Shown here piece after piece: positions 12,657 to 50,151 of a DNA stretch of 64,000 nt. The DNA is from Octopus sinensis (Eukaryota), in the NCBI RefSeq assembly GCF_006345805.1, contig NC_043011.1, forward strand, positions 21,588,464-21,652,463, written 5' to 3'. Within the stretch, counting starts at the first letter, position 1; each line of letters starts with the position of its first letter. Below the pieces are notes generated by a model. That model was not told the DNA's origin. It searched no databases and worked only from the letters and a program-made list of their open reading frames with translations. The translations under genes were made by a program, and so were the position numbers.

Positions 12657-12687
<31 letters not shown>

Positions 12688-12739
12688 TTGTGCCAGCTCA
12701 CCGCCTTCTCATAAAATAATTATGAAAATAATAATAATG

Positions 12740-14258: not shown

Positions 14259-15448
14259 ACGTGCCATAGTGATTGGTCAATTACACAAACAGACCATGAA
14301 ATCACTGAAAAGAAAATTCTATAATAACATATCAACAATAATAATTATCAAACAAAAAAAAAAGAGGAAAACATTGTGGTCAATTTTTACAATTATTATT
14401 TTTTTGTTGCATTATATACTTTATTATAATCTTGCATTTCTTTTTTTTTTTTTTTTCCTGTCACAATTTCGAAAAATTATGTGAGAAAATATTTTCTAAG
14501 ATGCTTCCTGTAAAAAAAAAAAAAAATCCAATCATTTAATGGTTTCAATAACTATTTGGAATATGATGTTGGTCTCGAGAGAAGAACTTGTAAATTTACC
14601 ATAGGAATCATCTGTAAATTTGCTATTTTCAATAGAAGTTTAGAAACATTTTTTATAAGAAGTGAGTTCATATAGGTTATATATGTACATGTGTGTGTAT
14701 GTATGTATGTATGTATGTGTATGTATGTATGTATGTATGTATGTATGTATGTACGTATGTATGTATGTATGTATGCATGTATGTATGTATGTATGTATAT
14801 ATATGTGTGTGTGTGTATATGTGTGTGTATATATATGTATATATGCATATCAATATGTATATATACAACTATACACACATATATAAATACATATATATAT
14901 ATTATTTATGTATATATATGTATGTGTCTGTGTATATATCCATACATTTATATATATATACACAACACACACAACACACATAATATAAATACATATATAT
15001 ATATATATAATATCTATATTATATAGATATATATATATTATATATATATATATTTATGTATATGGTGTGTGTGGTGTGTATACATATGTGCACGGCTTTC
15101 CGATTTAGTGCTTAAACGCAAGGAACAACCATTAAGTTTAAAGCTCAATGCATTACACCAGGTGAAACTCTGAACATTAGATATCAGTGCACTAATGTGC
15201 AGAAGGTTGCATATTACGAGAAACTCCCTAGAGTGGACGCAGAGAGCAAAGACATTTGCAAGAATAAGAGAAGACAAATGATATTGGTGATATTTCAAAT
15301 ATCTGTATCCTACATTATTTTCAATAACTCTGTAAGAATTGAATATCCAAAATATGACTTGTGTTGTTTGTCTTCTGCTATTATTTCAAACATGTATACA
15401 CACACACACACACACACATATGCATGTATGTATGTACATACATATATA

Positions 15449-15481
<33 letters not shown>

Positions 15482-15581
15482 CCGGAGTAAACACATAAAT
15501 GTGAAACAAGGTGGAAAAAAAGAGTACTCAAATACCAGGGGTAGAGTAATATGCTTTATTTAAAAGCAGCAGAAATTCAAC

Positions 15582-15629
15582 AAAACCTGTTACTCTGAGT
15601 TTCACGTTCCCGTTCGTCGGACAGTTTTT
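15582..15629 (-). ncRNA. Minimal type I hammerhead ribozyme motif (Penelope pLTR type)
   Basis: AAAAACTGT-CCGACGA-ACG(GGAA)CGT-GAAA-CTC(A)GAG-TA-ACAGGTTTT: stem I, core with U4C, 3-bp stem II with tetraloop, palindromic stem III, GUA cleavage triplet. Confidence 0.7.
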
Positions 15630-16361
15630 GTTAAAACACTGTTTAATTTCTGCTGCTTTTAAATAAAGTATATATATAGATATAGATATACACACACACA
15701 CACACATATATATATACGTATATATACATATATATACGTGTATATAATATATATATACGCATATACATATATATATATATACATATACATATATATACAT
15801 ATACACATATACATATATATACATATACACATATATATACATATATATATATACATACATATATATATATTTCTATATACATATATATATGTATATATAC
15901 ACACACACACACACGAATATATGTGTGTGTGTGTGTGTGTGTGCCACTGTGTGTTTGTGTGTGTGTATTCAAATGGTTCTAAAGAAGCTATAAGATGTTG
16001 CATGTGCACTGAACACTGGGAACATTGTTCTTTAAAGCAGAAACAACTATAAGCAAGTGGAAGTAGCTACATAACTCCAGTTTGTTTGTTTTTTGTCATT
16101 CATTTATTAATCAATAGTACACTCTGTACTGACCTACTGGTTCATATAAGAGTCCAGAGTGGAGAAATTCATAATAAATCACCCCTCTCCATCTCTAGTT
16201 CTCACTAATAATGTAAAATATAAGTAAAATGAGTTTTAACAATTGGTTGCTGATGTCTTATAGTAATCATAAAATATTTATAAATATATATATATTTATA
16301 TATGCATATACATACACACATACAAGTGCACACACATGCAGACACATATATAAATACATAC

Positions 16362-16396
<35 letters not shown>

Positions 16397-16604
16397 TGTA
16401 TGTATGTATGTATGTATGTATGTATGTATGTATGCATGTATAGTGGAACCTTGGTTTACGAGTTTAATATGCTCCTGAAGGCCGTTCATCACCTGAGATG
16501 TTTTATGTTAAAAAAATTGATTATGAACTGATTCGTTCATAATGAGAAGCATCCATAAATCAGAGTTTTATTACATATATGCATGCGCGTGTGTATGTAG
16601 GGAG

Positions 16605-16645
<41 letters not shown>

Positions 16646-16743
16646 TAAATATACATAGATTCACACACAGAGATATATACATACATATACAGATATATAT
16701 ACATGTGACCCACACACACACCACACACACACACACACACACA

Positions 16744-16795
<52 letters not shown>

Positions 16796-17537
16796 ATGAA
16801 ATAAACAGAGAAGCTGCCCTATGAAGAAACCACAGGTATAACTCAGAGGTGTTGCAAGCTCTTCTTGTAAGTCTGTCACAATATTGGAAATCATTCCATA
16901 ACATCAGCAGGTATGTCTTGTGGGGTCATCACAAGCATTTTACTCCTTAGCCAGTCTTCTTCGCCTGAGTAGCAAAGACTGAATTAGTTTTCACTTGCAA
17001 AAGGGTTCCATTTGCAGTCTCTTATCAACCATAGCCACCTTGAGCCTGTTTTGGCTGTCAGGCCAATCTCCTTGGTGGCTTTCTTCAATTGTTTAAGTTC
17101 CAGTCCAATATTCTGCAGGAAATAGTGCATACACACACAAACCAAACTGAATTTCTCTCTAAAGTTTTCATGCTACCAGAATCATTAGGCATGAACCAAA
17201 ATTACTCTGCACATTTATTCCTTTATTATACATCATTAAGGGCTAGCCCTATGTTTTATGTCTTTTGGTTAGATTGATTTTGGCATTACTTATGTCTGAT
17301 TGGTTCATAATGATGTGCTTCATCACAATTCTTACTTCGGAGCATGTTTATCTTCCTGTCAATTACTCTGATTTTGTTATGTTATTTTTGTTTTACCCTT
17401 TAGCATTCAGATTACTATGTCAAATGTAATGATTATTTATTCATATTGTTACGAATTAATCATACATTATCTCATAAAACTTGAATTTAATGATTTGATT
17501 CTTTCTTTTTAGAATGACAGATTGCAGGGTATGTATA

Positions 17538-17609
<72 letters not shown>

Positions 17610-17619
17610 TATATATAAA

Positions 17620-17650
<31 letters not shown>

Positions 17651-18055
17651 AATACATATATATTGATGAACTAAACATCAGAGAAGCTTCGCCCTATGAA
17701 GAAACTACAGGTGGATCTGGCCCATATGAACATGTAAGAGGTAGAATATTTTTGCTAGATATGGCCAGTTTCAATGCTAATGGGCTTAGATCACACACAC
17801 ACACACAAACACACATGTCAGTAGTTAATATATCTGAAAAAGAAGCATACTCTAAAACAACAGAGCAGTAGTATCTTTAGATGGTTATTTGTTATTGCCA
17901 GTCAGAAAGTCGCCATTGGTTCTGCAGCTATAAAGCGCTCAGCTGAATAGGCAACTCATCCCTTATGCAGCTAAGTGCTATATAGGTGTGAAACCAATGG
18001 TCAGTCTCTGACCATCCATAACAAACAACCTTCAAAGTGTATATATATAACATGC

Positions 18056-18124
<69 letters not shown>

Positions 18125-19657
18125 CATGCATGCATGTTTGTGTGTATGAAACAAAAATGAGCTAAGAGATATAACTCAGAGTGAGCAATGGCATGATTTT
18201 GAACAACAAAAACAAATAAAGTTATACTAAATCCCATACAAAATAAATTCTTGAATTATTGAAATTTTTCTTTCCTTCAAAATACATAATAAACAAATTC
18301 CTGGTGTTAATTGCATTCATTTCCAAATGAGAAACAAAATTAATCTCAAGAATCAATAATTGCCCAGAATTGGAATATCATTAAGGAAAAAGATACAATG
18401 ATTGTCATATGTGTATACGCCTACATATGTGTATATGCTCCTTGCATCTTACCATCCTCAAGATCATCAGAAATGAAAGAAACTTGGTGTCCATCATTGT
18501 GGATACCTTTATGAAATCTACACAGAGCCACTTATGACTGTACTTGCACACCTTTTGGTTCTAGTTGAAACTTTTACACATAGAAGCAGAGCATTGAAAG
18601 TGGTTTGATTAGTGAGATGAGTCTAATGTGGAATAGATGGTTGGCCACACTAGCTATCACAAAAAGCATATATCTAGAACCACAGTCAGACAATAAAAAT
18701 GGTTAGACTTGTCAACATAGTTGCAGCAATGTACTCATGTATTTTCAACATGTATGCATGTATATATGCATGTATATATGCATGTATGTATGTATGTATG
18801 TATGTATGTATGTATGTATGTATGTATGTATGTATGTATGTATGTATGTATGTGTATGTATGTATGTATGAATACATATATGTATTAATATGTATGTATG
18901 TATGTATGTATGCATGTATGTATGTGTATGTATGTATGTATGTATACATATATGTATTTATATGTATGTATGTATGTATGTATATATTTATATGTACGAG
19001 AGTAAGCTCATAAATATGAAACAAGGTGAAATAAACAGTACTCGAATACTGGAGGTAGAGTAAAATGCTTTATTAATAAAATTGCAAAGACATCACAAAA
19101 ACTGTTACTCAGGGTTTCACATTCCCGTCCCTCGGACAGTTTTGGTTGAGAATGGAGCAAAATGTGGTCATATGCATAAATATAGAATTATGTTGATAGA
19201 TACACATTTGAAAAAAGTTTTGTTTCATTGGCCCTTTCAACCAACAGTCTTTTCAATGACCGATTATATGAAATTACAATTATGATTTAAATTCATATTA
19301 TTATATAAATCTATGAAAACCTTAAATAATATGATTTTAATTTGTAATTGTAATTTCATATAACCAGTTATTGAAAAGACCATTAGTTGCAAGGACCAAT
19401 GAAACAAAACAATTTTTAAATGTGTATCAACGTAATTGTATATTTATGCTTATAACCATATTTTGTTCCATTCTCAACAAATTGGAACATGAAACTCTGG
19501 GTAATAGTTTTTGTGATTTCTTTGCAGCTTTATTAATAAAGTGTGTGTGTATATATATATAAGTATGTATATATGGTTGTATATGTGAATATATATACAT
19601 ACAGAGAGAGAGAGACAGAGAAATGTATGTGTGTGTATGTATATATATTATATATAC

Positions 19658-19692
<35 letters not shown>

Positions 19693-21251
19693 TGTATGTA
19701 TGTATGCATGTATACATATATACATACACATATATATAAATCAATAAAAAGAGTACAGTGAACTTGGTGTGGGGAGTATAAAATCCAACATATCAGAGTT
19801 CTATAAATATATGAATATATATATATATAAAGGAATAATGAGAAACTGGAGTTATTGAAGTTAATTAGAGTTTATTATCAGCGAAATCAATCATTATCTC
19901 TTACAGCTGTTTCAATTAAGCTCAGTGAAAATAAATATTAAAATCATATTTCTGAACTTAATCTTTTCAGAGGGAGGAAGAATATACCCTTAGATATTTC
20001 ATGCATTAGTAATTTGAATCATCATGGCAGACTCCGTGATGATTCATGTAACTAACTGTGAATCTACGCAAGGAGCAGGTTCCAAGGGAGGAGAATAATA
20101 AATGAATAAATAACATTCACTGCAGCTGTTTCCAATGAATTTTTAATTTAGTAATGAAGACATTATATTATTAGAGAAAACTGTTTTCATCAGGTGAATA
20201 TATGAGCTACAACATTCAAAACTATTCAAAATCCAATGAGATGTGCATCTTCATGATTCTGAACCCTTGCTCATAATTCAATAGTTAGCAAAGATCATGA
20301 GAAAGAGTGGCACACCCTCGGGTGGGTATATAAACTGATACTTGGCACGACGGAGCTTTTCTTTTTGCCTGCATTTAGTAAGTTTTGAAGTGAGAGTCAG
20401 TCCTTGCAATCCAATCCTACTCTGTAGACTTGGAAGTCTGACCAGATTGGCTAAGCAGGCTAAGACCACTGCAGTGACCAGTAAGCTGTAGGCTTAACAT
20501 TAGAGCAGCCTTCTCCCAGGATAATTGCTTTACGGGGTTGGAGAGCTCCACCTATCCTAAACCTGCTGGAAGGATGTCAAAAAGGGCACTGGACCATCTG
20601 AGGGACTTCACTATTTGATATGCTGTCAAAATAGACCCTCCAAGCCTTTTCTTTTCCCAAGGTACTCACATGACAGTGAGAATTTGTGCATGGAGCTTCT
20701 TCCATAACATGCTAATTAAACCATAGCTAGAACCCTGATAGATGCTACAACACCAGATCAGGGTATAACTAGAAACAACAGTAGCTAAGATGTGGTTCCA
20801 CATTCCAAAACTAACCCTGGGACTCCCAAACCAGGGCCTCCACTACCAGATGCAGTTTAAAATCATACCCAAGGTAAATAGATACATATACATGCACACT
20901 GTACATCATATATATATATATATACATACATACATATATATATATCAGAATTTTAATTGATTTGCTTTTCGCGGGAAGGAATTTTTCTTCGAAGTATACG
21001 TCTCGCTTTTATCCTTCGAACGTTTAGTAGATGAAATCTAGCGACTGAAGAGGGGATTTTCGTTGTGCTTATTGTCCTGTATCTCTCCCTTTTTTTTGTC
21101 TTGTCTTGTTCTTGGTTTGTGTCTATGTGTTTCGTCTCTCTATGTGTTCGACGTCTTTTTGGTGTCCTGTACACATATATGCGTGTATATGTACATGTAG
21201 AGGTAGGTACGTACATATATGTTTATATATATGCATATATTCTATTTTATT

Positions 21252-21300
<49 letters not shown>

Positions 21301-21842
21301 CAAAACGGGAAGTTGGACAATTTATTGGCATTATTTATTCACCATTATACATGTTTTGTTGCTAATAGGAATTACAGAGTTTTACGTGTTAGATAAACAT
21401 ATAAGGAATTTCCAATTAGAAATTCATTTGACAAAGAAATTAAATAATATTTGATAAAATTATAATTATTTAAATGATTTTTAATTAAGTAACATTTAAT
21501 TAAATGATATTATTTAATTTCTCTGGCAAATGAATCGAAAATTCCTCACATGTAAAACATGTAACATATAAAACTCTGTAATTCCTATTAGCAAATGGAA
21601 CATATGTAACGGGGTGGGGGTGGTGGCGGTAAATGATACAAATAAGTTTTCCAACTTCCTCTTTCCTTATACTATAACTCTGCAAACAATATTTCCAGAA
21701 TTTCCAACTTTGAAATGTGCTTTGCATCTGTACATCAACAACAACAGCATCTACATATTGAATTGTGATAATGGGATATGCAGCTTCAAGAGGAAACAGC
21801 TGGGAATTTACCCTATCTACCTATATTTTATACATACATACA

Positions 21843-21875
<33 letters not shown>

Positions 21876-21948
21876 GTATATTACATATTATATATTTATA
21901 TTTATAATATAATATATATATATATATATACATATATATATACATATA

Positions 21949-22031
<83 letters not shown>

Positions 22032-22049
22032 ACTGTGCCACCTGCACAG

Positions 22050-22105
<56 letters not shown>

Positions 22106-22279
22106 CTGTGCAGGTGGCACGTAAAGCACCCACTACACTCACGGAGTGGTTGGTGTTAGGAAGGGCATCCAGCTGTAGAAACATTGCCAGATTAGACTGG
22201 AGCCTGGTGCAGCCTTCTGGCTTCCCAGAACCCCGGTCGAACCGTCCAACCCATGCTAGCATGGGAACGGGCGTTAAAC

Positions 22280-22313
<34 letters not shown>

Positions 22314-22362
22314 ATATAAATATATATGTATATGTATATATACATATATATTATATATATAC

Positions 22363-22426
<64 letters not shown>

Positions 22427-22443
22427 TATATATATATATATAG

Positions 22444-22490
<47 letters not shown>

Positions 22491-22688
22491 TATATATATA
22501 TCCAATATATATATTATATATTATATATATATATATATATTATATATATATATATATATGCTTTATTTAAAGCAGCAGAAAATTCAACAAAACCTGTTAC
22601 TCTGAGTTTCGCAAAAAACTGTCCGATGAACGGCAACGCGAAGCTCAGAGTAACAGGTTTGTTGAATTTTCTGCTGCTTTAAATAAAG

Positions 22689-22739
<51 letters not shown>

Positions 22740-23148
22740 CTGTGTGTACATACGCATATACATATACATGCATATATAAACCTATGTATACACACACTTG
22801 TTTATATACACATACACACACACACATAATATATATATATATGTATGTATACCTGTACATATGTATGCATGTCAGTGTGTGTTTATAGTGATGTGTTTAT
22901 TATATCAAAAACAAAAACTTTCAATATAATAAATACAACAGTCAATTCTATCCTTTGTACAGAGTTCAATATCAGAAAATGTTTGCACTATATGATGTAT
23001 TTGGAAAAACTCGTGCGTGTGTGTGTGTGGCGCCTGCACGTTATTTATAAATATATGCATGTGTATATATAAATGTATGTATGTATATATATATCTATCT
23101 ATTATATATATCAAGTATGATGTATGTATGTATATATGTATAGTATAG

Positions 23149-23202
<54 letters not shown>

Positions 23203-23236
23203 CATACGTATAAGTATTTATATGTATAATATAAAT

Positions 23237-23267
<31 letters not shown>

Positions 23268-24733
23268 CTGTAGAGCATTACTGTTTTGAGGAAATATATA
23301 ATTATACTACATGTTTACTAAATTTCAAAAAGAAAGAAAATGTAAATAAATTATTTCAAATATCGATTTTTGACAATTGGCAAATGGTGCCATAGAAGAA
23401 ACAGTTACTGAATATTTCCTTGGTAATTACCAATGAATATTGGAAACTTATTTACATCCGTAATGTCCCCTAAAAAAAAAATACTCTTGAGAAAGATATT
23501 AATGCCACACAACCTCATTGGTCCCCTCCTTCTCCTCTACCACAATGAGGCATTGTGCCTATGTAAGAAAAAAAATATTGTATTTGACAATTTCAATTAT
23601 TATTTTTTTTTAATGAAAAGCAACTACAAATTTATGAACAAAATACAATTGTAAGCAGTTTCACAGTTATTTGTACTTCATTTTTATTTTTATCTAAATT
23701 GTATTTGCAATGAATTATCATTAAATGATATTTTTATTTAACTATTTTTTTACTCTTATTTCTGTTGTCTTTATTGTTGTGCTTGTATATGTGATACTTC
23801 TCTGAAACTGAGGAGCCGTAGTATTGAAAAGGATGGCTTTATTCCAGGTAATAAAAGATTACACTATGAGAGGGAAAGGAAGAAGTGTCACATAGCTACT
23901 CTCTTTTACTCTTTTACTTGTTTCAGTCATTTGACTGCGGCCATGCTGGAGCACCGCCTTTAATCGAGCAACTCGACCTCGGGACTTATTCTTTTGTAAG
24001 CCCAGTACTTATTCTATCGATCTCTTTTGCCGAACTGCTAAGTAATGGGGACATAAACACACCAGCATCGGTTGCCAAGCAATGCTAGGGGACAAACACA
24101 GACAAACAAACACGCATTTATATATATATATAGATATATACATATATACGATGGGCTTCTTTTAGTTTCTGTCTACCAAATCCACTCACAAGACTTTGGT
24201 TGGCCCAAGGCTATATAGGAAGACACTTGCCCAAGGTGCCACACAGTGGGACTGAACCCGGAACCATGTGGTTGGTAAGCAAGCTACTTACCACACAGCC
24301 ACTCCTGCACCTACCACTATTATGAAAAAAAAAATCTAGTCATAAATCCTTCAGTTTTGTTAACATAACTGGGTCGTTTCAGAAGATGGTAGTATGAAAT
24401 TTGAGGGAATTTTGGTAGCTAACTTTTGCATATTTAGTTACTACATACTGACTTGTATTTGAGGTTGAATTGTTGCAGTTGTTATTGATATTGCATTGAC
24501 CTTAAGCACAGTTATGAACCACATTTGAATGAAATAGAGTGCCTGTGAAGAATATGCCAGTGACTTTGAAGTTTCAGTTAGCTAAATCGTCATCATGTTA
24601 TATATGAATATATATATATATAATAATATATCTATATATATATATATATAAATATATTATATATATATATATTATATATATATATATATATATATTTATT
24701 ATATATATATAATATATATATATATAGATATTA

Positions 24734-24764
<31 letters not shown>

Positions 24765-24791
24765 ATATATATATATTTATATATATATATA

Positions 24792-25197
24792 TAGGCACAG
24801 GAGTGGCTGTGTGGTAAGTAGCTTGCTAACCAACCACATGGTTCCGGGTTCACTCCCACTGTGTGGCATCTTGGGCAGGTGTCTTCTGCTATAGCCCCGG
24901 GCTGACCAATGCCTTGTGAGTGGATTTGGTAGACGGAAACTGAAAGAAGCCTGTCGTATATATGTATATATATATATGTATGTGTGTGTATATGTTTGTG
25001 TGTCTGTGTTTGTCCCCCTAGCATTGCTTGATGCTGGTGTGTTTACGTACCCGTCACTTAGCGGTTCAGCAAAAGAGACCGATAGAATAAGTACTGGGCT
25101 TACAAAGAATAAGTCCCGGGGTCGATTTGCTCGACTAAAGGCGGTGCTCCAGCATAGCCGCAGTCAAATGACTGAAACAAGTAAAAGAGTAAAAGAG
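24792..25197 (+). mobile_element. Abundant tRNA-derived SINE family A (CORE-like domain, GAAACAAGTAAAAGA tail)
   Basis: GGCTGTGTGGTAAGTAGCTTGC head, GGCAYCTTGGGCARGTGTCTT domain, internal TA/TG microsatellite. Other copies at ~11260-11600 (+), 23905-24310 (-), 36250-36612 (-), 37415-37810 (-), 46150-46827 (-). Confidence 0.85.
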
Positions 25198-25438
25198 TAT
25201 ATATATATATATTGGTAAAAATGGTAAGATAACAATAGAAAGAAAGAGACCTCAATATTATGTAAATAGAGGAAATTTATCTGTAAAATAATATGTGACA
25301 ATTAACCAGATAACCGAAGAGATGGTGGTATGGATTTCCACCTCGGCATCCGAAACTCGGAGTTTTATCTTGGCTACCGAATAATTGTCACATATTATTT
25401 ACATATATAACATATATATATATATATATATATATAGT

Positions 25439-25470
<32 letters not shown>

Positions 25471-26949
25471 ATTATATATATATATGTGTATATATATATC
25501 GGCAAAGAGAGACAATAGAATAAGTACTGGGCTTACAAAGAATAAGTCCCGGGGTCGAGTTGCTCAACTAAAGGCGTTGCTCCAGCATGGCCGCAGTCAA
25601 ATGACTGAAACAAGTAAAAGAACAAAAGAATATATATATATCTTTAAAAATAATCTCCTAATTTTCATTATCTGTCCTATGGGATAATGGTGTAATGAAT
25701 ATATAAGTGTTGGTTTAATTCTAAATGTTATAGTTTAGCTAGTAAGCTAGTCAAACAAATATATATACTCGGATTCGAGTACGGTGAATAAGAGATCCAC
25801 TGCCATCCTTATGGACACTCTTACAGCCTTCTACGGTGAATAGAAGGAAGAGTAAGTGATAGAGGGAGATGTGAAGGCATCAACGATGTAAGGGAGACTA
25901 CTGGAGGAGTAACCCAAATCTAGACGCCTCACATCTTCCTGTCGTACAAAGTTTTTAACTTTTGTTTTGCTACGCTTGCACAACTAGGCGAGCATTTTGC
26001 CAGTCATCTCAGTCAGCACCCTTAGATCAAGTCTTCAGTATTTCGTCCATGTCTCCCTCTTGCATAAATTCCTTCTGCTTTGAGCATCTTTACAGCTTAT
26101 GGTCAATTAACCCCGGCGTATTACGACTAAATATTGAATCAATTCCTGACAGAATAATGACAATGCCATCATTGGTGGGGTTTGATCACAAAACTGAAAG
26201 TATGTAACTAAATACATTCCGCAATTTTGAGAAAGGGTTAAGTCTATTACAATCAACGCCAGTGCTAAACTGGTACTTATTTTATTGATGCTGAAAGAAT
26301 GAAAGGCAAAGTTGACCTCGGCAGAATTTGAACTCAGAACATAAAGATGGATCAAATATCACTAAGCATTTTGCTTGGTGTGCTAACGACTCTGCCAGCA
26401 CCCTGCCTTTTTCTTGGGTTTAATATTGGACATTAAAGAAAGAGAGACAGAGAGAGAGAGGGGGAGACAGACAGACACACACACACACACACACACAGAA
26501 AGAGAGAGACAGAGAGAAAAAGAGAGACGGACAGAGACAGACAGGCTAAAGGGAAATAACTCTAGATTACTAGAAGAAAGAAAAGTATAAGGAAACAATA
26601 AAATATAGTTACTGAGTAATTAATATCTATTAAACGAATGGACACCCAAGGAAAATCCAAGGCAAGCGTTACTTGCGGCAAACATTATTAAAAGGAATTA
26701 ACTAATTAAAGTACTTGTTCCTCGTCTGCTAGGGAATAGGGCAGCCTCAGTGCTCTGCCATTCGCCGTTCTTTGGCCAACGCGAGGATATTACTTCCGCT
26801 TCACCCACCCAACCCTATCTAAATTAGCTTCATTCAGATTGCAAATACCACATATTTGCAGCCTTGCCTCACGGAGTAGAAGTCAAAGAAGAAAAATGGG
26901 TGCTAGTATAGTATTCGATCTACCACAGTGTCAAACAGAGTTATCTACC

Positions 26950-27700
26950 TTATCTTTCAATTATTTCAGAGATAAAACACTTCAGATATTTCAGAGATTT
27001 CTTTCTTTTTTACCAGAATCATAGTTTTAGCATCTAACCATGATCACTCAATGGCTTGAGTGTGTGATCCGGTATACAATAATTTCATTCATTATTATTA
27101 TTATAATGTCGTTGATGTTCACTATCATATACGGATAACCTATGGCATTTAAATCATTATAAGCTGGCCACTCATCTGAATGAATTAGTGAACCTTTTTC
27201 ACTTTTTCTTTCCACACAAAAGTATCGACAGTCTGAGCCTTGTTTGAGACTAAAAACCCACGGCCGATCGATTCTACGTCTATGGTTCTTGTTGTTTCGT
27301 TCTGCATCACTGTCTTGGAAGAGAGGAGCGTCGTTGCCATTCAGTATTCTTCCTCAATTGTATTTTCGTCGACCAGTAAATCTTGCTTCGTCGATCTGAC
27401 TGGGGTTATCGTTTGTTCTAACCATCTTCCTTCGTCGTACATGATAAACTATGAATCCACACACCTCGCGGCACATATTATACCAGTCAGTTATTGCTGG
27501 GGGTCATGGGTATATCCATGACAAAGAAAAATATTAGTTCTAAAACCTCACTCAGGCTCAGCTAGCAGTTTAATTTGTTAATGTCCGTATAATGGGAAAA
27601 TTGGTTTCTTTCACATACTGAACGTTCAAGGTAGATAACCTGGCTTATACAGTTTGACAACGTGGTAGACCGCATCCGAAAATGTTCAGATAAGCAACTC
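26950..27700 (-). mobile_element. Decayed Merlin (IS1016/ISXO2-like) DDE transposase relic
   Basis: Minus strand reads QIDEARFTGRRKYN*GRIL (~27400), PWVFS, GSLIHSDEWPAYNDLNAIGY (~27170) and HTQAIE*SWLDAK (~27060), the EIDE / SD.W.AY / HTQ.IE..W motifs of the Merlin/IS1595 family. Boundaries approximate. Confidence 0.8.
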
Positions 27701-31570: not shown

Positions 31571-31670
31571 NNNNNNNNNNNNNNNNNNNNNNNNNNNNNN
31601 NNNNNNNNNNNNNNNNNNNNNNNNNNNNNNNNNNNNNNNNNNNNNNNNNNNNNNNNNNNNNNNNNNNNNN
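31571..31670. other. Assembly gap (100 N)
   Basis: Run of n characters. Confidence 1.
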
Positions 31671-32008: not shown

Positions 32009-33426
32009 TTAAAAGTATTATAGCTGCCACTTCCACTTCCCTTACAAATTCTAGACACCATGTCCCTCTCCTCTACTCTCTCAGAAATATTAAGCTTTAT
32101 GTCTGTGTTGAGAATACAAAAGTAATTCACTTCAATATATATTTCCATAGGGAAGTTATATCATCAATAACAGTTATTTAGATCAAACAAGGTATATATT
32201 TCTGAGATAGAAAAGGTAAGAAAAAAATAAGTGATATGCAAACTACATAAATGTAAGCTTTGAAATGGTTTACTAGGATTTATTATTTTCATCTCACTTC
32301 ATGGAAAACAATATTTTATTAATAGAAACACATCTGATGGCCTAGTCAGTAAGTTATCAGCAGTTCATAGCCCCTTATTATCACATTAACCCTTTCGTTA
32401 CCGTATTTATTTTGAGATGCTCTGTGTTTCTTTCAATTAATTTTAAATATAAAAAAGAATTTAGTAAAATAACTTCGTTATCATTCAGCTAGTGTTAGGA
32501 ACATAAATTGTGACTAAGGTTTGGTGGAAGATTTTAATTCAATACTTATGAAAACAAGACATTTGTACTACAGAGCCAGAGGCGGTTTTGGCCGGGTTGG
32601 TATCAGTCCCTGCCAATATATTTAACTATTAAAAGATAAGTAGTTAACACCAGTCGCATGTTTCATTGATGTGACTGATTAATGACAGTGCTGTGAATTT
32701 TATAGATACTATCTTTCTATCACTTAATGAAACAGAAGGCTGGTTCTCCTGATAATATGAAGGGGTTCCAAGACTAGAGGAAGGGAGAAAGTACGACATC
32801 CTCAAACTGGAGACAAGGACCAAATGATTGCAAAAGAGTGAACTCCTTTAAAGACACCAAAGGAGCAGATGTTCATACCAAATCAAGCATTGGATTGAGT
32901 GATCCACACAAGTGAGGCACAACAGAATTTGAACTCAGAACACTAAGAGCTGGAATAAATACTGCTGATTCTGAAGACTGTCAATTCACTACTTCTCTGA
33001 TTTGCAGTGCTGAGCTTATTTTCTCCTGCAGGATCTGCTTTATGCCATGCAAATCAAAGTTTAGTATGTCCCCTAAAAATCCTAATGATTTCAAAAGCAT
33101 TAACTATATTGTGATAGTATATCATCTCTTTTCAAATGTGACCGTTATCTAAGAATTTTAGAATAAAAATAGTTGGGGGTGGTAGTGACAATTTCACTGA
33201 AAGAATACTACCACAAACAAAATACTAAAAATTGTTGCAACATAGAATAATAACTGGATTAAAAGGACTTTGTTCTTCACAAACTTATCAATACTACAGT
33301 TCAAGTATTCTATAAACAGAAGTGTCTAAATTTACAAACTCATGACTCATATAGACACAGAAAAATACTAAAAGCCAGAAATAAAATTTTAAGAAAACAC
33401 TCAAACACAATATAGTATTTTTAAGA

Positions 33427-33432
33427 TTTAAT
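33427..33432 (-). terminator. Candidate polyadenylation signal (ATTAAA) for the selenoprotein mRNA
   Basis: Plus-strand tttaat, 27 nt downstream of the SECIS. AATAAA alternatives occur further down near 32315, so this is not unique. Confidence 0.35.
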
Positions 33433-33458
33433 ATTCAAGCAAATTTCAGTCGAGATTT

Positions 33459-33540
33459 TTACTGGTTATTCATCAGAATTTATCCAACTCTGGTCGATAT
33501 GTTTAAACCAGTGTTTTCATAGCCAGAAAATAACCAGTAA
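33459..33540 (-). promoter_or_regulatory. SECIS element in the 3' UTR of the selenoprotein gene
   Basis: Minus strand: helix I TTACTGGTTATT/AATAACCAGTAA (12 bp perfect); core ATGAA...GGAT (U.U, G.A, A.G, A.G quartet); helix II AACACTGGTT/GACCAGAGTT; unpaired AAA exactly 11 nt after ATGAA. Confidence 0.88.
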
Positions 33541-33689
33541 GAAAGTCAAATGAAAATTTTAAAATAAGCATTACAGAGTATTTTCAGGATAACAAATGTT
33601 ATCCTGAAAAAAGAAAGACAGGATAATTTAGAATTCAGCCTTGACTATCAACTTTAGTGGCTGGTCAAAAGATTTATGAGTGATATATT

Positions 33690-34205
33690 AGGAAATTATT
33701 AGTGCTGAAGAGTCTATGAGAGAGGGAAATAGGAATAAATAGGTATTAGATAACATAGTACAGAGATGTAGATTTTGAGGAGGGTTGGAAATTGAGAGAA
33801 GAGTGAACGTGAAAGATATAGGGAATGAGGGGGAAAACAGAGGGAATAGGGATTTAAAGAATGGAAGGAGGAATATTGATGAAAATAGATGAGTGAAAAA
33901 AAGTGGAGGAACAAATATAAAAATATATAAAATACCATAGAAAGAAAGCAAGAAAAGAAAAAACTAAGAGAGAGAGAGAAATAAAAGAAGATCCAGAAAT
34001 TGGTTGAATGAAGTAGATAGATGGGGAAAAAAGATAGAAAGAGAGACTGAAGTGAGTAAAAGGATGTAGAGAAAAAGAGAAATTCAGAGAATGGAGATGA
34101 GACAGAAAGTAGGAAAGTGAAAAAAAATAGAAGGGATAACATGGATAGGAAATAGGAGGCAAGGAAGTGGGGAAAGGAAAAGAAAGAAAATATAGAAAAG
34201 AAATC
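33690..34205 (+). repeat. ~500-bp purine-rich low-complexity tract
   Basis: Strong A/G skew on + without a fixed unit; lies between the selenoprotein stop codon and the SECIS. Confidence 0.9.
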
Positions 34206-34850
34206 CACATGGTTAAGCCAAATAGTACTTCATCAGACAGTAGTTAGATCACTCAATTAATTGAAGTGATAGATTTTTATGCTGAGCAACAAGAAGTAAT
34301 ATATGAGAAGCAAATGAATGGAAGCTTTCAAAATTCACAATGTATCTCCTTATATAGTCAACTCCAGTTGATATATTTGAGGTCACATGGAATTAAGGAT
34401 GGCCTTTTCCACCAAACATAAACATCAATATCACATCAGACTGCTCAGCATTAACCAGAAATTGTAGCCACCATCTACAACATACATTGTTAAGCAAGCA
34501 TCATAAAATATCTCACCAATGAACAAGGTTAACTCTTTCAGTCAGCTGAACAGCCTTGTTGTTTTTGTTGTTCTAACTGGTTAGAGAAATATTGCTTCAG
34601 TGAAAATGTAAGGGTAGCAACATCTACTGGATAAATATCTTCACCATAATGAGACAGGTTGTGCAACTTATCATGATACTGGGATGTGAGCCAGTCCATA
34701 TCTATATGTCTGAACCATGAGGATTTAGAAAGGAAGTATGATAGCCAAGGCCTTTAATTAATTAATTAGAAAGAGAGAAGTGACTTTAATATCAGAATTT
34801 AAAGTGTAACATAATTGCAGCAGATATAGAGTAGAGCAGCCCAAATTGGT

Positions 34851-34907
34851 TTAATGAACTGCTTTGAGTTGCTTTCCGTCCTGAGCATCTTTTATACACT
34901 TCAGAAT
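34851..34907 (-). CDS. MIEN1: Rdx-family selenoprotein exon 4 (terminal coding exon)
   Basis: Poly-T tract then ttacag|ATT. Reads ILKCIKDAQDGKQLKAVH*, which aligns with the MIEN1 LIEAIRRASNGETLEKIT segment. Total protein is 87 aa. Confidence 0.85.
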   Translation of the reverse strand: MLKCIKDAQDGKQLKAVH

Positions 34908-36070: not shown

Positions 36071-38478
36071 TGTATATGATACTTATATATTACTGAATTT
36101 TAAAATTTCTAATATGTCGGACTGTATAGATATAAACTAGTATATAAGATTTGCATGTGCTTGGTCTATCTTTGAATTTTGTGGTGTTCCTGTGGTTGTT
36201 TTCTCCTATTGCCTCCCCTTGGATAAAAAAGTATATACATATATATATATGACTGCGGCCATGCTGGAGCACCGCCTTTAGTCGAGCAAATCAACCCCGG
36301 GACTTATTCTTTGTAAGCCCAGAACTTATTCTATCGGTCTCTTTTGCTGAACCGCTAAGTGACGGGGACGTAAACACACTAGCATCGGTTGTCAAGCAAT
36401 GCTAGGGGGACACAGACACACAAACACACACACATACACACATATATATATATATACATACGACAGGCTTCTTTCAGTTTCTGTCTACCAAATCCACTCA
36501 CAAGGCATTGGTTGGCCCAGGGCTATAGCAGAAGACACTTGCCCAAGATGCCACGCAGTGGGACTGAACCCGGAACCATGTGGTTGGTTAGCAAGCTACT
36601 TACCACACAGCCAAACAGTCATGTACACAACTTGGACGGACACATACCAGTACACGGACATAAGTTAACATGCACATACACATGTACACACAGACACAGA
36701 CGCATCTACCCATTCTCCTAGATACTCACATACATACGTAGCATATAAGTACAAACATACATACATACATGCGTATGGGCATACACACGTACATACGCAC
36801 GTACATGTACACACATACATACGCACATGCATACGTGCGCATATACATACATACGCACATACATACGTACGTGCATACACACATACATACGTGTGTGTGT
36901 GTGTGTATATATATATATAACCTGAACTAACTAGATGTAAGGGGAAAAAAAAAAGATAAGTAATAGTAAAAGAAAAGTTTTGAGATATAGAGATAAGTGG
37001 CTGATAATAGGTTTTAGAGTTTTGTCGTGGGGGTAAGAGTCGTAAATCACTTCCTAGTTTCGGCGGGGGTGGGAGGTTGAAATTTGATATTGTTGTGATG
37101 AGTGGTCAGTCTACACCTATCCACCACTACAGGTTTATAGCTTTAATTTTATAGTGTGTGTGTGTGCGTACATATACACACATACATACATACATACATA
37201 CATACACACATGTGTACGTACGTACATACATACATATATGCATGCATACATACATGTATATAACGAACCAACCATTACTTTCTCAGATGCAGCACAGATT
37301 TTTGTCAGTGAACAGGTCGCGGTCTTAAAGCGACGAAAATATTTTGACAAATTAAACTTAAATGTTGAAGTTAATTGAACGGCTTGATATATTCTCTTTT
37401 TTTTTTTTTTTTCTCTTTTACTTGTTTCAGTCATTTGACTGCGGCCATGCTGGAGCACCGCCTTTAGTCGAGCAAATCGACCCCGGGACTTATTCTTTGT
37501 AAGCCCAGTACTTATTCTATCGGTCTCTTTTTGCCGAACCGCTAAGTGACAGGGACGTAAACACACCAGCATCGGTTGTCAAGCAATGCTAGGGGGACAA
37601 ACACAGACACACAAACACACATACATATATATATATATACATATATACGACAGGCTTCTTTCAGTTTCCGTCTACCAAATCCACTCACAAGGCATTGGTC
37701 GGCCCGGGGCTATAGCAAAAGACACTTGCCCAAGATGCCACGCAGTGGGACTGAACCCGGAACCATGAGGTTGGTTAGCAAGCTACTTACCACACAGCCA
37801 CTCCTGCGCCTATACATATATACATATATATTATAGACACACACACACACAGATTATATACAAGGAGTTTTCATCAACTGATATAATGTAACAGGTATGG
37901 TTTACCACTAAAGCTCCAGCCTGAACTGCAATTGAAAAATGTGGTGTTGAGACTGCCTATCAAAGGCATCTTTTAATTTTAAATCTCTCTCTCTCTTTCT
38001 ACGTGTATATATGTATATAGATGTATCATTATCATCATCATCATCCTCATTTAATGTCTGTTTTCCATGCTAGCATGGGTCGGATGGTTTAACTGAGAAT
38101 TGGTAAGCCGGGGAACTGCACCAGGTTCCAATCTGGTTTCAGCATGGTTTCTATGGCTGGGTGCCCTTCGTAACGCCAACCACTCCAAGAGTGTTGTGGG
38201 TGCTTTTTACGTGCCGCCAGCACAGGTGCCACTTACATGACGCTGGCATTGACCATGACTACGATCTCACTCGGCTTGACAGGTCTTCTCCAGCACGGTA
38301 TATCACCAACAGTCTTGGTCACCTGTCACTGCCTCTGTAAGGCCCAACATACAAACACACACATGCGGGTGGGAAGCAAACTTCTTAACCTCACAGTCAT
38401 GCCAAAAAATAAATAAATAAAGAGAATGCACATCTAAAACCAGAAATGATAAAAGATTAATGAAATAGAAAAACTGAC

Positions 38479-38555
38479 CTCTTCGTGGTCTGGGTATGAG
38501 CCACTTTTGAGCCTTGAATGAACCCCGCGGTGATTGATAGTGACTTCAAAGGCAC
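38479..38555 (-). CDS. MIEN1: Rdx-family selenoprotein exon 3
   Basis: Acceptor atttcag|GT GCC TTT GAA, donor GAG|gtcagt. Reads (G)AFEVTINHRGVHSRLKSGSYPDHEE, the Rdx GxFE(I/V)xxNxxxxxSK/R motif. Confidence 0.92.
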
Positions 38556-40377: not shown

Positions 40378-40478
40378 CTTTACTGGGATTCACAGTGCTT
40401 TTTATATTAACTTCAGGAAAATTTGCGAGGATCTTACTAGTGAGAGCCTCCATCCTGTTCTGTCCACCTCATGCCTGA
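40378..40478 (-). CDS. MIEN1: Rdx-family selenoprotein exon 2, contains in-frame TGA (Sec13) at 40471-40469
   Basis: Acceptor ttttacag|T CAG GCA TGA GGT GGA ... AGT AAA G|gtaaga. Reads (C)QA-U-GGQNRMEALTSKILANFPEVNIKSTVNPSK(G) and completes the CxxU motif; phases 2 and 1 match both neighbours. Confidence 0.9.
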
Positions 40479-42278: not shown

Positions 42279-42593
42279 CACACAATATATATACATATAC
42301 ATATATACATATATATATACATATATACATATATATATATACCTATATATATACATATATGTATGTATTTATATATATATATATATATGTATGTATATAT
42401 ATATATACATATATACATATATATACATATATATATATACATATATGTATGTATATATATATGTATGTATGTATATATATACATATATACTATATATACA
42501 TATATATACATATATAATATATATACATATATGTATGTATATATATATACATATATAACATATATATACATATATGTATGTATATATATATAC

Positions 42594-42624
<31 letters not shown>

Positions 42625-42628
42625 AATA

Positions 42629-42690
<62 letters not shown>

Positions 42691-43030
42691 TATATAATAT
42701 ATACATATATATATATGTATACATGTATGTATATATCTATACATATAAATATATACATATACATATATACATATAGATATATACATATATATATAACATA
42801 TATATATATATATATACATATATATAAATATAAACATATATATATACATATATATAAATATACACATATATATACATATATATATACACATATATATACA
42901 TATATATAAATATACACATATATATACATATATATAAATATATACATATATATGTACATATATATATATACACATACATACATATATATATACATATGTA
43001 TATACATATATACATATGTATATACATATT
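42220..43030. repeat. ~800-bp compound (TA)n/(CATA)n microsatellite; representative of dozens in the window (e.g. 975-1390, 3160-3580, 14680-15060, 21820-22560)
   Basis: Direct reading; source of the YI/VC/HT-repeat ORFs in the ORF track. Confidence 0.97.
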
Positions 43031-48186: not shown

Positions 48187-48215
48187 CAGTACTCTATCAA
48201 CACTTCAACAACCAT
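48187..48215 (-). CDS. MIEN1: Rdx-family selenoprotein (SelW2/MIEN1-like) exon 1
   Basis: Minus strand aaagATGG (good Kozak context): ATG GTT GTT GAA GTG TTG ATA GAG TAC TG|gtaagt = MVVEVLIEY plus TG of Cys10; 29 coding nt, perfect donor. The symbol is a best-family assignment from remembered similarity. Confidence 0.88.
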
Positions 48216-49203: not shown

Positions 49204-50151
49204 TGTATCATATACATACGCGTCATAAATGTAATAAAATAAATTTCCCCAGTAAAAAAATAAATAACAATATTAAATTTTAAAGAAATAGTTTATATTA
49301 ATGGTGCTTTCATAGCGTACAGTCTAATGGGACATTTATAGCGTTTGATTTATAGGGACATTATCGTGTCTAGTCTGGCGAAATTTTACACTGTAGGTCG
49401 ACTAAAAAACATAACTGCCCAATAGAATTTATTAATAGTTATCATATTAACAAAATGTATTAAGTCGTTGAATAATAATAATAATAATAATAATAATTGA
49501 TTCTGGTTCATTGGCCACAAGGGCTAACATAAATCAAGACACATGTAAAGACAAACACAGGACGAAAAGTACAAAGGGTTTTGCGAAAAAGAAAGGTCTG
49601 TAGTGATCCTATAACGGCGCGCGCTCGCGCACCGTCCATTTGTATTTCGCGCGTGCGGAGGTGGTGCTTTCACCACCGGAAGAAGAACCCTTTTGCCTAC
49701 GTAGCAGTTAGCCGAGGCAAGGGGATCGTAAGACGTTGACCACCAGCGTCCAGCAAGCAGCGACTGAAGGCGACGGTCACGTATATATTCTCTCCGTCCG
49801 GACTTGATTCTAGCAGCACCTTACCAAAAGGCCTTTAACCAAATTGTTGCAGACCACATCTCCCTGTTCCGGACGCCATCTTTGACCAGTGTCGTTTTGC
49901 ATTTGAACACTTTCTTATTTTACAGCGATAAGGTTCAGCACTGACACATTTATATCAAAGGGATACCAGATAACCACTTATTGTTACTGTTACCACATTA
50001 GAGAATAAAGTAGTATATATATCTTTTACGTCTGCGTCTTGTTGTTTCTGACTGGTAGAATTCTGGATTATTAAAGCAACGGCTAGTAATTGCCTCTTGT
50101 ACCCCGAAAGTACAAGAGAAGATATATTCACACACAATAAGTTCGTTACAG

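What the first reader, a model, noticed from the sequence alone, without database searches (positions are those of the whole stretch)
33459..33540. Canonical SECIS element 1.3 kb downstream of the selenoprotein stop codon
Seen on the minus strand: a 12-bp perfect lower helix, the AUGAA/GGAU non-Watson-Crick quartet with tandem G.A/A.G pairs, a ~10-bp upper helix with one mismatch, and AAA 11 nt above the core. Established: this is the eukaryotic SECIS consensus bound by SBP2. It was found independently of the coding exons and on the same strand, so the two observations support each other. The internal loop (9 and 11 nt) is on the large side.
Basis: partly seen in the sequence, partly recalled or inferred. 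Interest (0 to 1): 0.85.

Follow-up and report, generated by a model that had tools for sequence, protein, structure and literature searches.

The report
Octopus selenoprotein W2 gene's SECIS element
The flagged 82-base hairpin is very probably a genuine selenocysteine-insertion signal in the 3' untranslated region of an octopus selenoprotein W2-like gene that the public Octopus vulgaris annotation mis-models; it is an ordinary, expected element.

Summary
On the minus strand, 33540..33459 has a perfect 12-bp lower helix, an AUGAA/GGAU core, a 10-bp upper helix with one A.A mismatch, and unpaired AAA in a 10-nt apical loop. It starts 1,310 nt after a TAA stop.

The gene upstream has four exons and encodes 87 aa. 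It belongs to the Rdx family (Pfam 62.9 bits). Its closest solved relative is human MIEN1, so it fits the SELENOW2/MIEN1 group. An in-frame UGA sits at the second Cys of the CxxC motif (C-Q-A-U).

Rfam SECIS_1 is the best of 4,227 families across the 3' region. It scores below gathering (21.4 vs 35 bits), partly because the model does not cover the long lower helix.

The strongest evidence is a neighbouring paralogue in O. vulgaris. It also has CxxU and carries a homologous SECIS (29.6 bits). That SECIS is 88% identical against about 71% in the flanking UTR. All five helix changes preserve pairing, including one compensatory C-G to U-A change. The poly(A) hexamer about 27 nt downstream is conserved in position.

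No transcript data or other cephalopods could be reached. This is a new member of a known kind, of modest interest.

The parts
33459..33540 (-). Whole SECIS element, type I form with no third helix
   Evidence: Sequence read. Rfam SECIS_1 gives 21.4 bits over the full model. It is the only hit of my descriptor in the window. It is homologous to the paralogue SECIS.
33529..33540 (-). Helix 1, 5' arm: UUACUGGUUAUU
   Evidence: Perfect 12-bp complement of 33459-33470. Pair probabilities are about 1.0. Across the paralogue there is 1 change in 24 nt, U-A to U.G.
33517..33520 (-). AUGA, the 5' half of the non-Watson-Crick quartet (kink-turn core)
   Evidence: It is invariant in the orthologue and the paralogue.
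33506..33515 (-). Helix 2, 5' arm: AACACUGGUU
   Evidence: Pairs with 33486-33495, with one A.A mismatch. The paralogue shows compensatory C-G to U-A, A.A to U-A, and U.G to C-G changes.
33496..33505 (-). Apical loop UAAACAUAUC, with the conserved unpaired AAA at 33504-33502
   Evidence: The AAA is invariant in all three sequences. The loop tolerates an A-to-G change in the O. vulgaris reference and a 2-nt insertion in the paralogue.
33486..33495 (-). Helix 2, 3' arm: GACCAGAGUU
33482..33485 (-). GGAU, the 3' half of the quartet (KGAW)
   Evidence: It is invariant in the orthologue and the paralogue. The consensus comes from PMC3753652.
33459..33470 (-). Helix 1, 3' arm: AAUAACCAGUAA
33427..33432 (-). 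Probable poly(A) signal ATTAAA, 27 nt 3' of the SECIS
   Evidence: The paralogue has AATAAA at the aligned position, offset by 1 nt. Identity between the paralogues falls sharply after about 33390. The two proximal ATTAAA hexamers (34790, 34758) are not conserved in the paralogue.
33433..34850 (-). Inferred 3' UTR from the stop codon to the distal poly(A) signal. It is assumed to be unspliced.
   Evidence: It is single copy in the window. It is 99% identical to the O. vulgaris reference. It aligns along its length with the paralogue's 3' UTR at 65-71% identity. There are no transcript data.
34851..34907 (-). Coding exon 4 (ILKCIKDAQDGKQLKAVH plus the TAA stop at 34853-34851)
   Evidence: It is the part of O. 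vulgaris protein P0001 that is modelled correctly.
38479..38555 (-). Coding exon 3 (G)AFEVTINHRGVHSRLKSGSYPDHEE
   Evidence: The acceptor is tttcag and the donor is gtcagt.
40378..40478 (-). Coding exon 2, which carries the Sec codon TGA at 40471-40469: (C)QAU GGQNRMEALTSKILANFPEVNIKSTVNPSK(G)
   Evidence: It is identical in the O. vulgaris reference. The UGA aligns with the second Cys of the MIEN1 CEPC motif.
48187..48215 (-). Coding exon 1: ATG ... MVVEVLIEY plus TG. The donor is GTAAGT and the start context is caaagATGg.
   Evidence: Adding this exon raises the Pfam Rdx score from 50.9 to 62.9 bits and completes the profile. It aligns to VRIVVEYC of MIEN1. The paralogue has ...LYVVIEY plus TG with a GTAAGT donor.

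Best explanation
33540..33459 (minus strand) is a functional eukaryotic type I SECIS element. It lies near the end of a roughly 1.4-kb 3' UTR of an octopus SELENOW2-type (SELENOW2/MIEN1 group, Rdx-fold) selenoprotein gene.

Inferred mechanism, from established knowledge of eukaryotic Sec decoding:
- The AUGA/GA quartet forms a kink-turn that SBP2 binds.
- With eEFSec and Sec-tRNA(Sec), this recodes the single in-frame UGA (40471-40469), about 1.55 kb upstream in the spliced mRNA, as selenocysteine.
- The product is an 87-aa thioredoxin-like protein with a C-Q-A-U redox motif.

Shown here:
- the sequence and structure features of the element;
- the gene model with UGA at the CxxC position;
- the same-strand downstream position;
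- conservation and structure-preserving substitutions in a paralogue.

Inferred, not shown:
- inclusion of the element in the mature mRNA;
- SBP2 binding;
- Sec insertion.
For: - **Anatomy.** All SECIS features are present.
- **Rfam.** SECIS_1 is the best-scoring of 4,227 families over the 3.25 kb downstream of the last exon.
- **Descriptor scan.** This is the only hit in 128 kb of both strands.
- **Upstream gene.** It has 4 exons, all with AG/GT sites and consistent phases, and an 87-aa product. It scores Pfam Rdx 62.9 bits (cut-off 22.6) and TIGR02174 CXXU_selWTH 63.8 bits. Human MIEN1 (2LJK) matches at 46.8 bits, E = 2.9e-11, with UGA opposite the second Cys of CEPC. Mouse SelW matches at only 20 bits.
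- **Literature.** Invertebrate members of this group fall in the SELENOW2 branch and are selenoproteins (PMC13134290).
- **Orthologue.** In the O. vulgaris reference the CDS has 1 mismatch in 264 nt. The SECIS has one change, in the apical loop.
- **Paralogue (L002).** It has the same exon phases and a C-D-A-U motif. A homologous SECIS lies 2.1 kb after its stop, with Rfam 29.6 bits and E = 0.006 and folding z = -5.28.
- **SECIS conservation.** Identity is 87.8% against 70.9% (5' flank), 76.3% (up to the poly(A) signal) and 61.0% (beyond). Fisher p = 4e-5 against all flanks and 0.0016 against the transcribed flanks.
- **Helix changes.** There are 5 changes in 46 paired nt, and all preserve or improve pairing, including one C-G to U-A double change. 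The AUGA, GA and AAA motifs are invariant.
- **Poly(A) signal.** The hexamer right after the SECIS is conserved in position (ATTAAA vs AATAAA), while the proximal hexamers are not.
Against: - The Rfam score is below the curated gathering threshold: 21.4 bits here and 29.6 in the paralogue, against 35. Nothing is reported at gathering.
- Shuffled sequence yields about 1.35 descriptor hits per window, so the motif alone is not rare.
- Comparative support rests on only three sequences, two of them about 99% identical. The count of structure pairs shuffle control is therefore uninformative (168/500).
- The whole 3' UTR is better conserved between the paralogues than synonymous sites are. The flanks may therefore not be a neutral yardstick.
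- No RNA-seq or EST evidence could be reached.
- Two ATTAAA hexamers 61 and 93 nt after the stop could in principle end the transcript early.
- The internal loop (8 and 12 nt) is large.
Confidence: 0.9

Rival explanations
1. A chance AT-rich hairpin that happens to carry ATGA, AA and GA at SECIS-like spacing.
For: Dinucleotide shuffles of the window give a mean of 1.35 hits per 128 kb to my relaxed descriptor, and 0.22 with helix 1 >= 10 bp. The Rfam score is below gathering.
Against: - It lies on the correct strand, 1.3 kb downstream of a gene with UGA at the CxxC position. The expected number of chance hits in about 3 kb of one strand is about 0.03.
- A homologous copy follows the paralogous selenoprotein gene. 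It has 88% identity, invariant motifs and only structure-preserving helix changes.
Confidence: 0.03
2. A real SECIS-like relic that is no longer used. Either the transcript ends at a proximal poly(A) signal, or the gene is a decaying pseudogene.
For: ATTAAA hexamers lie at 34790 and 34758, just after the stop. No transcript evidence is available. The public annotation does not model the Sec exon.
Against: - The ORF and all splice sites are intact in both the window and the O. vulgaris reference. The CDS has 1 mismatch in 264 nt, against 96-98% identity in the surrounding DNA.
- The proximal hexamers are not conserved in the paralogue, while the distal one is.
- The SECIS is the best-conserved block of the UTR.
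- Annotation pipelines routinely mis-model selenoproteins (abstracts of PMC13134290 and PMC12822975).
Confidence: 0.05
3. The SECIS was brought by, or belongs to, a transposable element such as a Sec-encoding Naiad/Penelope-like retroelement, rather than to the host gene.
For: - Penelope-like element fragments with RT and GIY-YIG motifs lie on the same strand just downstream (about 31.7-30.2 kb) and in intron 1 (about 45.3-43.7 kb).
- Naiad elements in clams and spiders carry SECIS elements, and TE-borne SECIS acquisition has been proposed (PMC8557442).
Against: - The SECIS and the whole UTR are single copy in the window.
- They are collinear with the paralogue's UTR from just after the stop to about 300 nt past the SECIS.
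- For the downstream element, the SECIS would lie 5' of its ORF, which is the wrong side.
- SECIS-bearing Naiads place the SECIS 1-21 bp after their stop codon.
Confidence: 0.01
4. A C/D-box snoRNA-like element, using UGAUGA at 33476-33471 and CUGA at about 33449.
For: Weak Rfam matches to four C/D snoRNA families overlap 33393-33481, at 15.4-18.2 bits and E = 1.7-4.9.
Against: - The scores are far below gathering (39-50) and the E-values are above 1 in a 401-nt search.
- The boxes are only about 25 nt apart, and there is no terminal stem.
- The UGAUGA box changes to UUGUGG in the paralogue, while the SECIS motifs are invariant.
Confidence: 0.01

Closest known systems
Eukaryotic SECIS element (Rfam RF00031 SECIS_1; type I as defined for SECISearch3, PMC3753652)
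   Same: - AUGA...GA quartet that fits UGAN/KGAW.
- Upper helix of 10 bp.
- Unpaired AAA in the apical loop.
- Lower helix.
- Position in the 3' UTR of a UGA-containing gene.
- No third helix, so it is type I.
   Different: - It is below the Rfam gathering score. The Rfam model has only a 5-bp helix 1 close to the core. Here the true 12-13-bp helix lies beyond a large internal loop (8 and 12 nt) and is not credited; the model instead forces a mismatched pairing of UUUUC with GAUGA.
- Helix 2 has an A.A mismatch, which is a U-A pair in the paralogue.
SELENOW2 / MIEN1 (formerly Rdx12) subgroup of the Rdx (SelW/SelT/SelH) thioredoxin-like family
   Same: - Length of about 87 aa, an N-terminal beta-strand followed by CxxU, and a G-x-FE-V motif.
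- The best solved relative is human MIEN1 (46.8 bits), against 20 bits for SelW1.
- Invertebrate members are reported as Sec-containing SELENOW2 (PMC13134290).
   Different: - Human MIEN1 has Cys (CEPC), an N-terminal extension and, from my own knowledge, a C-terminal prenylation box. The octopus protein has Sec and ends in ...KAVH.
- I built no phylogeny, so the assignment to SELENOW2 rather than MIEN1 rests on the cited paper's statement about invertebrates.
Zebrafish SelW2a/SelW2b tandem pair (PMC3316567)
   Same: Two Sec-containing SELENOW2-type paralogues lie next to each other on one chromosome, each with its own SECIS.
   Different: The octopus pair is head-to-head, with coding starts about 30 kb apart. 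It is much more diverged in protein (44% identity). It arose independently, in the mollusc or cephalopod lineage.

Membership tests
Eukaryotic SECIS element | Core quartet with tandem G.A/A.G pairs and sequence UGAN / KGAW | tested here: met
   AUGAA at 33520-33516 and GGAU at 33485-33482. The consensus is from PMC3753652. The core is invariant in the orthologue and the paralogue.
Eukaryotic SECIS element | Conserved unpaired adenines in the apical loop at the right distance from the core | tested here: met
   AAA at 33504-33502 lies 12 nt after AUGA, in a 10-nt apical loop. It is invariant in all three sequences.
Eukaryotic SECIS element | Helix 2 of appropriate length and low bending between the core and the apical loop | tested here: met
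   There are 10 pairs, with one A.A mismatch and no bulges. The helix is perfect in the paralogue.
Eukaryotic SECIS element | Helix 1 below an internal loop | tested here: met
   The helix is a perfect 12 bp, plus a U.G pair, with pair probability about 1.0. The internal loop of 8 and 12 nt is larger than in the Rfam consensus.
Eukaryotic SECIS element | Score at or above the Rfam RF00031 gathering threshold (35 bits) | tested here: not met
   The score is 21.4 bits in the window and 29.6 bits in the paralogue. It is still the top family in both 3' regions.
Eukaryotic SECIS element | Location in the 3' UTR of an mRNA with an in-frame Sec-UGA, on the same strand | tested here: inconclusive
   The genomic position fits: 1,310 nt after the stop of a gene with UGA at CxxC, with a conserved poly(A) hexamer 27 nt beyond. 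Inclusion in the mature transcript could not be checked, because no RNA data were reachable.
Eukaryotic SECIS element | Structure conserved with compensatory changes in homologues | tested here: met
   The paralogue shows C-G to U-A (both sides), A.A to U-A, U.G to C-G and U-A to U.G changes, and no disruptive change in 23 pairs. This rests on only 3 sequences, so statistical power is low.
Eukaryotic SECIS element | Binds SBP2 and directs Sec insertion at UGA | not testable with these tools
   This needs a reporter, 75Se labelling or a binding assay.
SELENOW2/MIEN1 group of the Rdx family | Rdx (SelW/T/H) thioredoxin-like domain | tested here: met
   Pfam PF10262 gives 62.9 bits (cut-off 22.6), covering profile positions 2-74 of 74. 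TIGR02174 gives 63.8 bits (cut-off 34.2).
SELENOW2/MIEN1 group of the Rdx family | CxxU (or CxxC) redox motif right after the first beta-strand, with UGA at the second position | tested here: met
   EYCQAU in the window aligns to EYCEPC of MIEN1. The paralogue has EYCDAU.
SELENOW2/MIEN1 group of the Rdx family | Closer to SELENOW2/MIEN1 than to SELENOW1, SELENOH or SELENOT | tested here: inconclusive
   The match to MIEN1 (2LJK) is 46.8 bits, against 20 bits for SelW1 (2NPB). No SELENOW2 sequence was available for comparison and I built no tree. The subfamily placement follows PMC13134290.

The most novel reading that the evidence does not exclude
Octopus carries a head-to-head pair of Sec-containing SELENOW2 genes. 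Their proteins have diverged almost neutrally: 44% identity, and pN of about 0.39, which is close to the divergence of the intergenic DNA. Their entire 3' UTRs, not only the SECIS, are better conserved than synonymous sites.

The most novel reading is that these UTRs carry additional conserved cis-elements, or undergo 3'-restricted gene conversion. Either could co-regulate Sec decoding of the pair. On this reading, the unusually large internal loop would mark a lineage-specific SECIS variant.
Probability: 0.1. Interest if true: 0.45.

Novelty: new member of a known kind. Interest (0 to 1): 0.3.

Why it matters
- **Annotation.** The result corrects the record for an octopus chromosome. Two small selenoprotein genes are mis-modelled in the O. 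vulgaris reference. One skips the Sec exon and has a spurious N-terminus. The other starts at the first Met after the UGA.
- **Selenoproteome.** It adds two SELENOW2-type genes, each with its SECIS, to the cephalopod selenoproteome.
- **Method.** It is a clean example of paralogue comparison validating a SECIS that scores below the Rfam threshold.
- **Biology.** It does not change understanding of Sec decoding.

Tried and rejected
- **Rfam at gathering threshold.** The whole window gave nothing.
- **Rfam E-value mode on the whole window.** It was swamped by microsatellite matches to miRNA families, and the SECIS hit fell out of the list. It was uninformative, so I re-ran it on the 3' region.
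- It located exon 3 only weakly. My first guess of SELENOH was dropped once the PDB search pointed to MIEN1.
- **The O. vulgaris model P0001.** Its N-terminal 24 residues map to unrelated or repeat sequence, and the model skips the Sec exon. I rejected it as a gene model.
- **The search of protein representatives.** Run with P0001, it gave only one true relative, P0003, plus one spurious bacterial repeat protein, P0002.
- **The search for homologous proteins.** The two searches, one with the window peptide and one with P0003, each returned a single O. vulgaris protein.
- **Transposon origin and snoRNA readings.** I considered both and rejected them (see the rival explanations).

Full report
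**What is at the coordinates**

Read on the minus strand, 33540..33459 is 82 nt:
UUACUGGUUAUU-UUCUGGCU-AUGA-A-AACACUGGUU-UAAACAUAUC-GACCAGAGUU-G-GA-U-AAAUUCUGAUG-AAUAACCAGUAA.
- The two outer 12-mers are perfect complements. A U.G pair can extend this helix to 13 bp.
- The inner 10-mers pair with one A.A mismatch and a terminal U.G.
- AUGAA and GGAU face each other, as in the SECIS quartet. The consensus UGAN/KGAW comes from PMC3753652.
- AAA sits unpaired at the 5' side of a 10-nt apical loop, 12 nt after AUGA.
- There is no third helix, so the form is type I.

RNAfold gives z = -4.23 against 200 shuffles. The centroid structure is the SECIS shape. The explicit SECIS-form structure evaluates to -19.4 kcal/mol, with -7.4 for the upper stem-loop.

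**Is it more than chance?**

- Rfam at gathering thresholds reports nothing in the window.
- In E-value mode, the best of all 4,227 families is SECIS_1 (RF00031), both in 33300-33700 and in the 3.25 kb from the last exon onward. The match covers the full model at 21.4 bits against a gathering score of 35, with E = 0.1 and 0.83 respectively.
- The printed alignment shows why the score is low. The model has a 5-bp helix 1 close to the core and pairs UUUUC with GAUGA, including mismatches. The real 12-bp helix lies further out and earns nothing.
- A SECIS descriptor I wrote requires ATGA, AA 10-13 nt later, GA, helix 2 >= 8 bp and helix 1 >= 7 bp, each with at most 1 mismatch. It hits exactly once on both strands of the window, at this element. 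Dinucleotide shuffles give 1.35 hits per window, or 0.22 with helix 1 >= 10 bp.

The motif alone is therefore not rare. The case rests on context and conservation.

**The gene**

On the same strand I reconstructed four coding exons:

| Exon | Coordinates | Encodes |
|---|---|---|
| 1 | 48215-48187 | MVVEVLIEY plus TG; donor GTAAGT |
| 2 | 40478-40378 | carries TGA at 40471-40469 |
| 3 | 38555-38479 | (G)AFEVTINHRGVHSRLKSGSYPDHEE |
| 4 | 34907-34851 | ends in the TAA stop at 34853-34851 |

All junctions are AG/GT and the phases are consistent. The product is 87 aa:
MVVEVLIEYCQAUGGQNRMEALTSKILANFPEVNIKSTVNPSKGAFEVTINHRGVHSRLKSGSYPDHEEILKCIKDAQDGKQLKAVH.

- It matches Pfam Rdx at 62.9 bits (cut-off 22.6) over the whole profile, and TIGR02174 CXXU_selWTH at 63.8 bits.
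- Among solved structures, the best match is human MIEN1/C17orf37 (2LJK, 46.8 bits, E = 2.9e-11, residues 3-85). EYCQAU aligns to EYCEPC, so the UGA sits at the second Cys of the redox motif. Mouse SelW scores only 20 bits.
- The literature places invertebrate members of this group in the SELENOW2 branch, as selenoproteins, and derives MIEN1 from a vertebrate duplication (PMC13134290; PMC3316567).
- The SECIS base lies 1,310 nt after the stop, and its core is about 1.55 kb from the UGA in the spliced mRNA.

**Source and orthologue**

The only database protein that shares words with the query is a 69-aa 'hypothetical predicted protein' of Octopus vulgaris (P0001). Its locus is GCA_951406725.2, OX597831.1:56866897-56903986 (L001), which is 96-99% identical to the window. 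The window is therefore from the O. vulgaris species complex.

That annotation skips the Sec exon and carries a spurious N-terminus. In L001 the four exons I propose are intact, with a single mismatch in 264 nt (Leu6 to Ser). The 3' UTR is 99% identical, and the SECIS differs by one A-to-G change in the apical loop. This is compatible with function but carries little information.

**The paralogue: the informative comparison**

A full HMMER scan with P0001 found P0003, a 72-aa O. vulgaris protein on the same chromosome. Its locus (L002) lies head-to-head with the window gene, about 16 kb beyond the window's end.
- P0003 is annotated from the first Met after an in-frame TGA.
- The real gene has the same four-exon structure and phases, and reads ...LYVVIEYC-D-A-U-GGWKEMNTLRK....
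- 2.1 kb after its stop, Rfam finds SECIS_1 at 29.6 bits (E = 0.006 over 4 kb and all families). My descriptor finds the same site. It folds into the SECIS shape as the MFE structure, with z = -5.28.

This element is plainly homologous to the one in the window.
- The proteins are only 44% identical. The CDS is 57% identical, and third codon positions 46%.
- The SECIS is 87.8% identical, against 70.9% in the 250 nt upstream, 76.3% down to the poly(A) signal, and 61.0% beyond. Fisher p = 4e-5 against all flanks and 0.0016 against the transcribed flanks.
- Of 46 paired nucleotides, 5 differ, and none disrupts pairing. The changes are C-G to U-A (both sides), A.A to U-A (repairing the window's mismatch), U.G to C-G, and U-A to U.G.
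- Helix 1 has 1 change in 24 nt (binomial P = 0.003 at the flank divergence of 0.29). AUGA, GA and AAA are invariant.
- The loops take a deletion, a 2-nt insertion and six substitutions.
- With only three sequences, the formal shuffle control has no power (168/500). I therefore rest on the pattern of changes, not on that statistic.

**mRNA 3' end**

No AATAAA lies between the stop and 32500. ATTAAA occurs at 34790, 34758 and 33432.
- The hexamer at 33432-33427 is 27 nt past the SECIS and aligns, offset by 1 nt, with a canonical AATAAA in the paralogue.
- The two proximal hexamers are not conserved.
- Identity between the paralogues collapses after about 33390.

This suggests that the transcript ends about 20-30 nt after 33427, with the SECIS in its last 100 nt. 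It is an inference, because no transcript data were reachable.

**Rivals**

- A chance hairpin is disfavoured by position and by the paralogue.
- A repeat or transposon origin is disfavoured. The UTR is single copy in the window and collinear with the paralogue's UTR over 1.6 kb. The Penelope-like fragments nearby lie outside it. The SECIS-bearing Naiads described in PMC8557442 place the SECIS directly after their own stop.
- The weak C/D snoRNA matches (15-18 bits, E > 1) use a UGAUGA box that is not conserved in the paralogue.
- A relic SECIS of an unexpressed gene cannot be fully excluded without RNA data. It is unlikely, given the intact and conserved ORFs.

**Verdict**

This is a type I SECIS that serves a SELENOW2-type selenoprotein gene in octopus. 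It is a new, mis-annotated member of a well-known kind. My confidence is about 0.9, and the interest is modest.

Noticed in passing
L002 (O. vulgaris OX597831.1:56838051-56860914, reversed): exons 2281-2363, 9976-10076, 11544-11620, 12799-12864; SECIS about 14940-15024: A second Sec-containing SELENOW2-like gene (108 aa, motif C-D-A-U) lies head-to-head with the window gene, about 16 kb beyond window position 64000. The public model (P0003) starts at the first Met after the UGA, so it is truncated.
   Followed up: yes
window 34823-33149 vs L002 12904-15357: The paralogues' 3' UTRs, and about 250 nt beyond the poly(A) site, align at 61-71% identity. Third codon positions of the CDS are only 46% identical (pS 0.60, pN 0.39). 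The UTR is therefore better conserved than synonymous sites. Possible causes are 3'-limited gene conversion, constraint on the UTR, or a fast-evolving CDS.
   Followed up: partly
window 54913-54860 (minus) and L001 gene model 10001-27090: The O. vulgaris reference model P0001 begins with 'MHKSVKLYGYHTILLSVQ', read from unrelated sequence about 6.7 kb upstream of the true start. It skips the Sec exon. Its first 24 residues are not part of the real protein.
   Followed up: yes
window 48200-48198 (exon 1, codon 6): The window has TTG (Leu), while the O. vulgaris reference has TCG (Ser) in the first beta-strand. This is the only CDS difference between the two assemblies.
   Followed up: no
window about 45300-43700 (minus, intron 1), about 31700-30200 (minus) and about 12470 (minus): These are degenerate Penelope-like retroelement copies with an RT (YLDD; Pfam RVT_1 at 27.4 bits, just below cut-off) followed by a GIY-YIG-like motif. 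They contain many in-frame stops, including TGA. I judged the TGAs to be decay, not Sec codons.
   Followed up: partly
window 31571-31670: A run of 100 N, which is an assembly gap, lies inside the downstream retroelement copy.
   Followed up: no
window 33581-33610: A near-perfect 30-nt palindrome (CAGGATAACATTTGTTATCCTG...) lies about 40 nt 5' of the SECIS. It is conserved in the O. vulgaris reference with 1 change, but the region is only about 55-60% identical in the paralogue.
   Followed up: partly
window 49599-50151 and 51683-52235: A 553-bp direct repeat at 99.8% identity, with copies 2.08 kb apart, lies upstream of the gene's first exon.
   Followed up: no
window, many sites (e.g. 22038-22117, 19668-19738, 42300-43000, 36750-36920): TA/CA-rich microsatellites give dozens of sub-threshold Rfam matches to miRNA families such as mir-297, mir-3149 and mir-466. 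These are low-complexity artefacts.
   Followed up: no
window 48400-48370 (minus): A palindromic TGACGCGTCA motif lies about 170 nt upstream of the start codon. It may be a promoter element (CRE-like). I did not test it.
   Followed up: no
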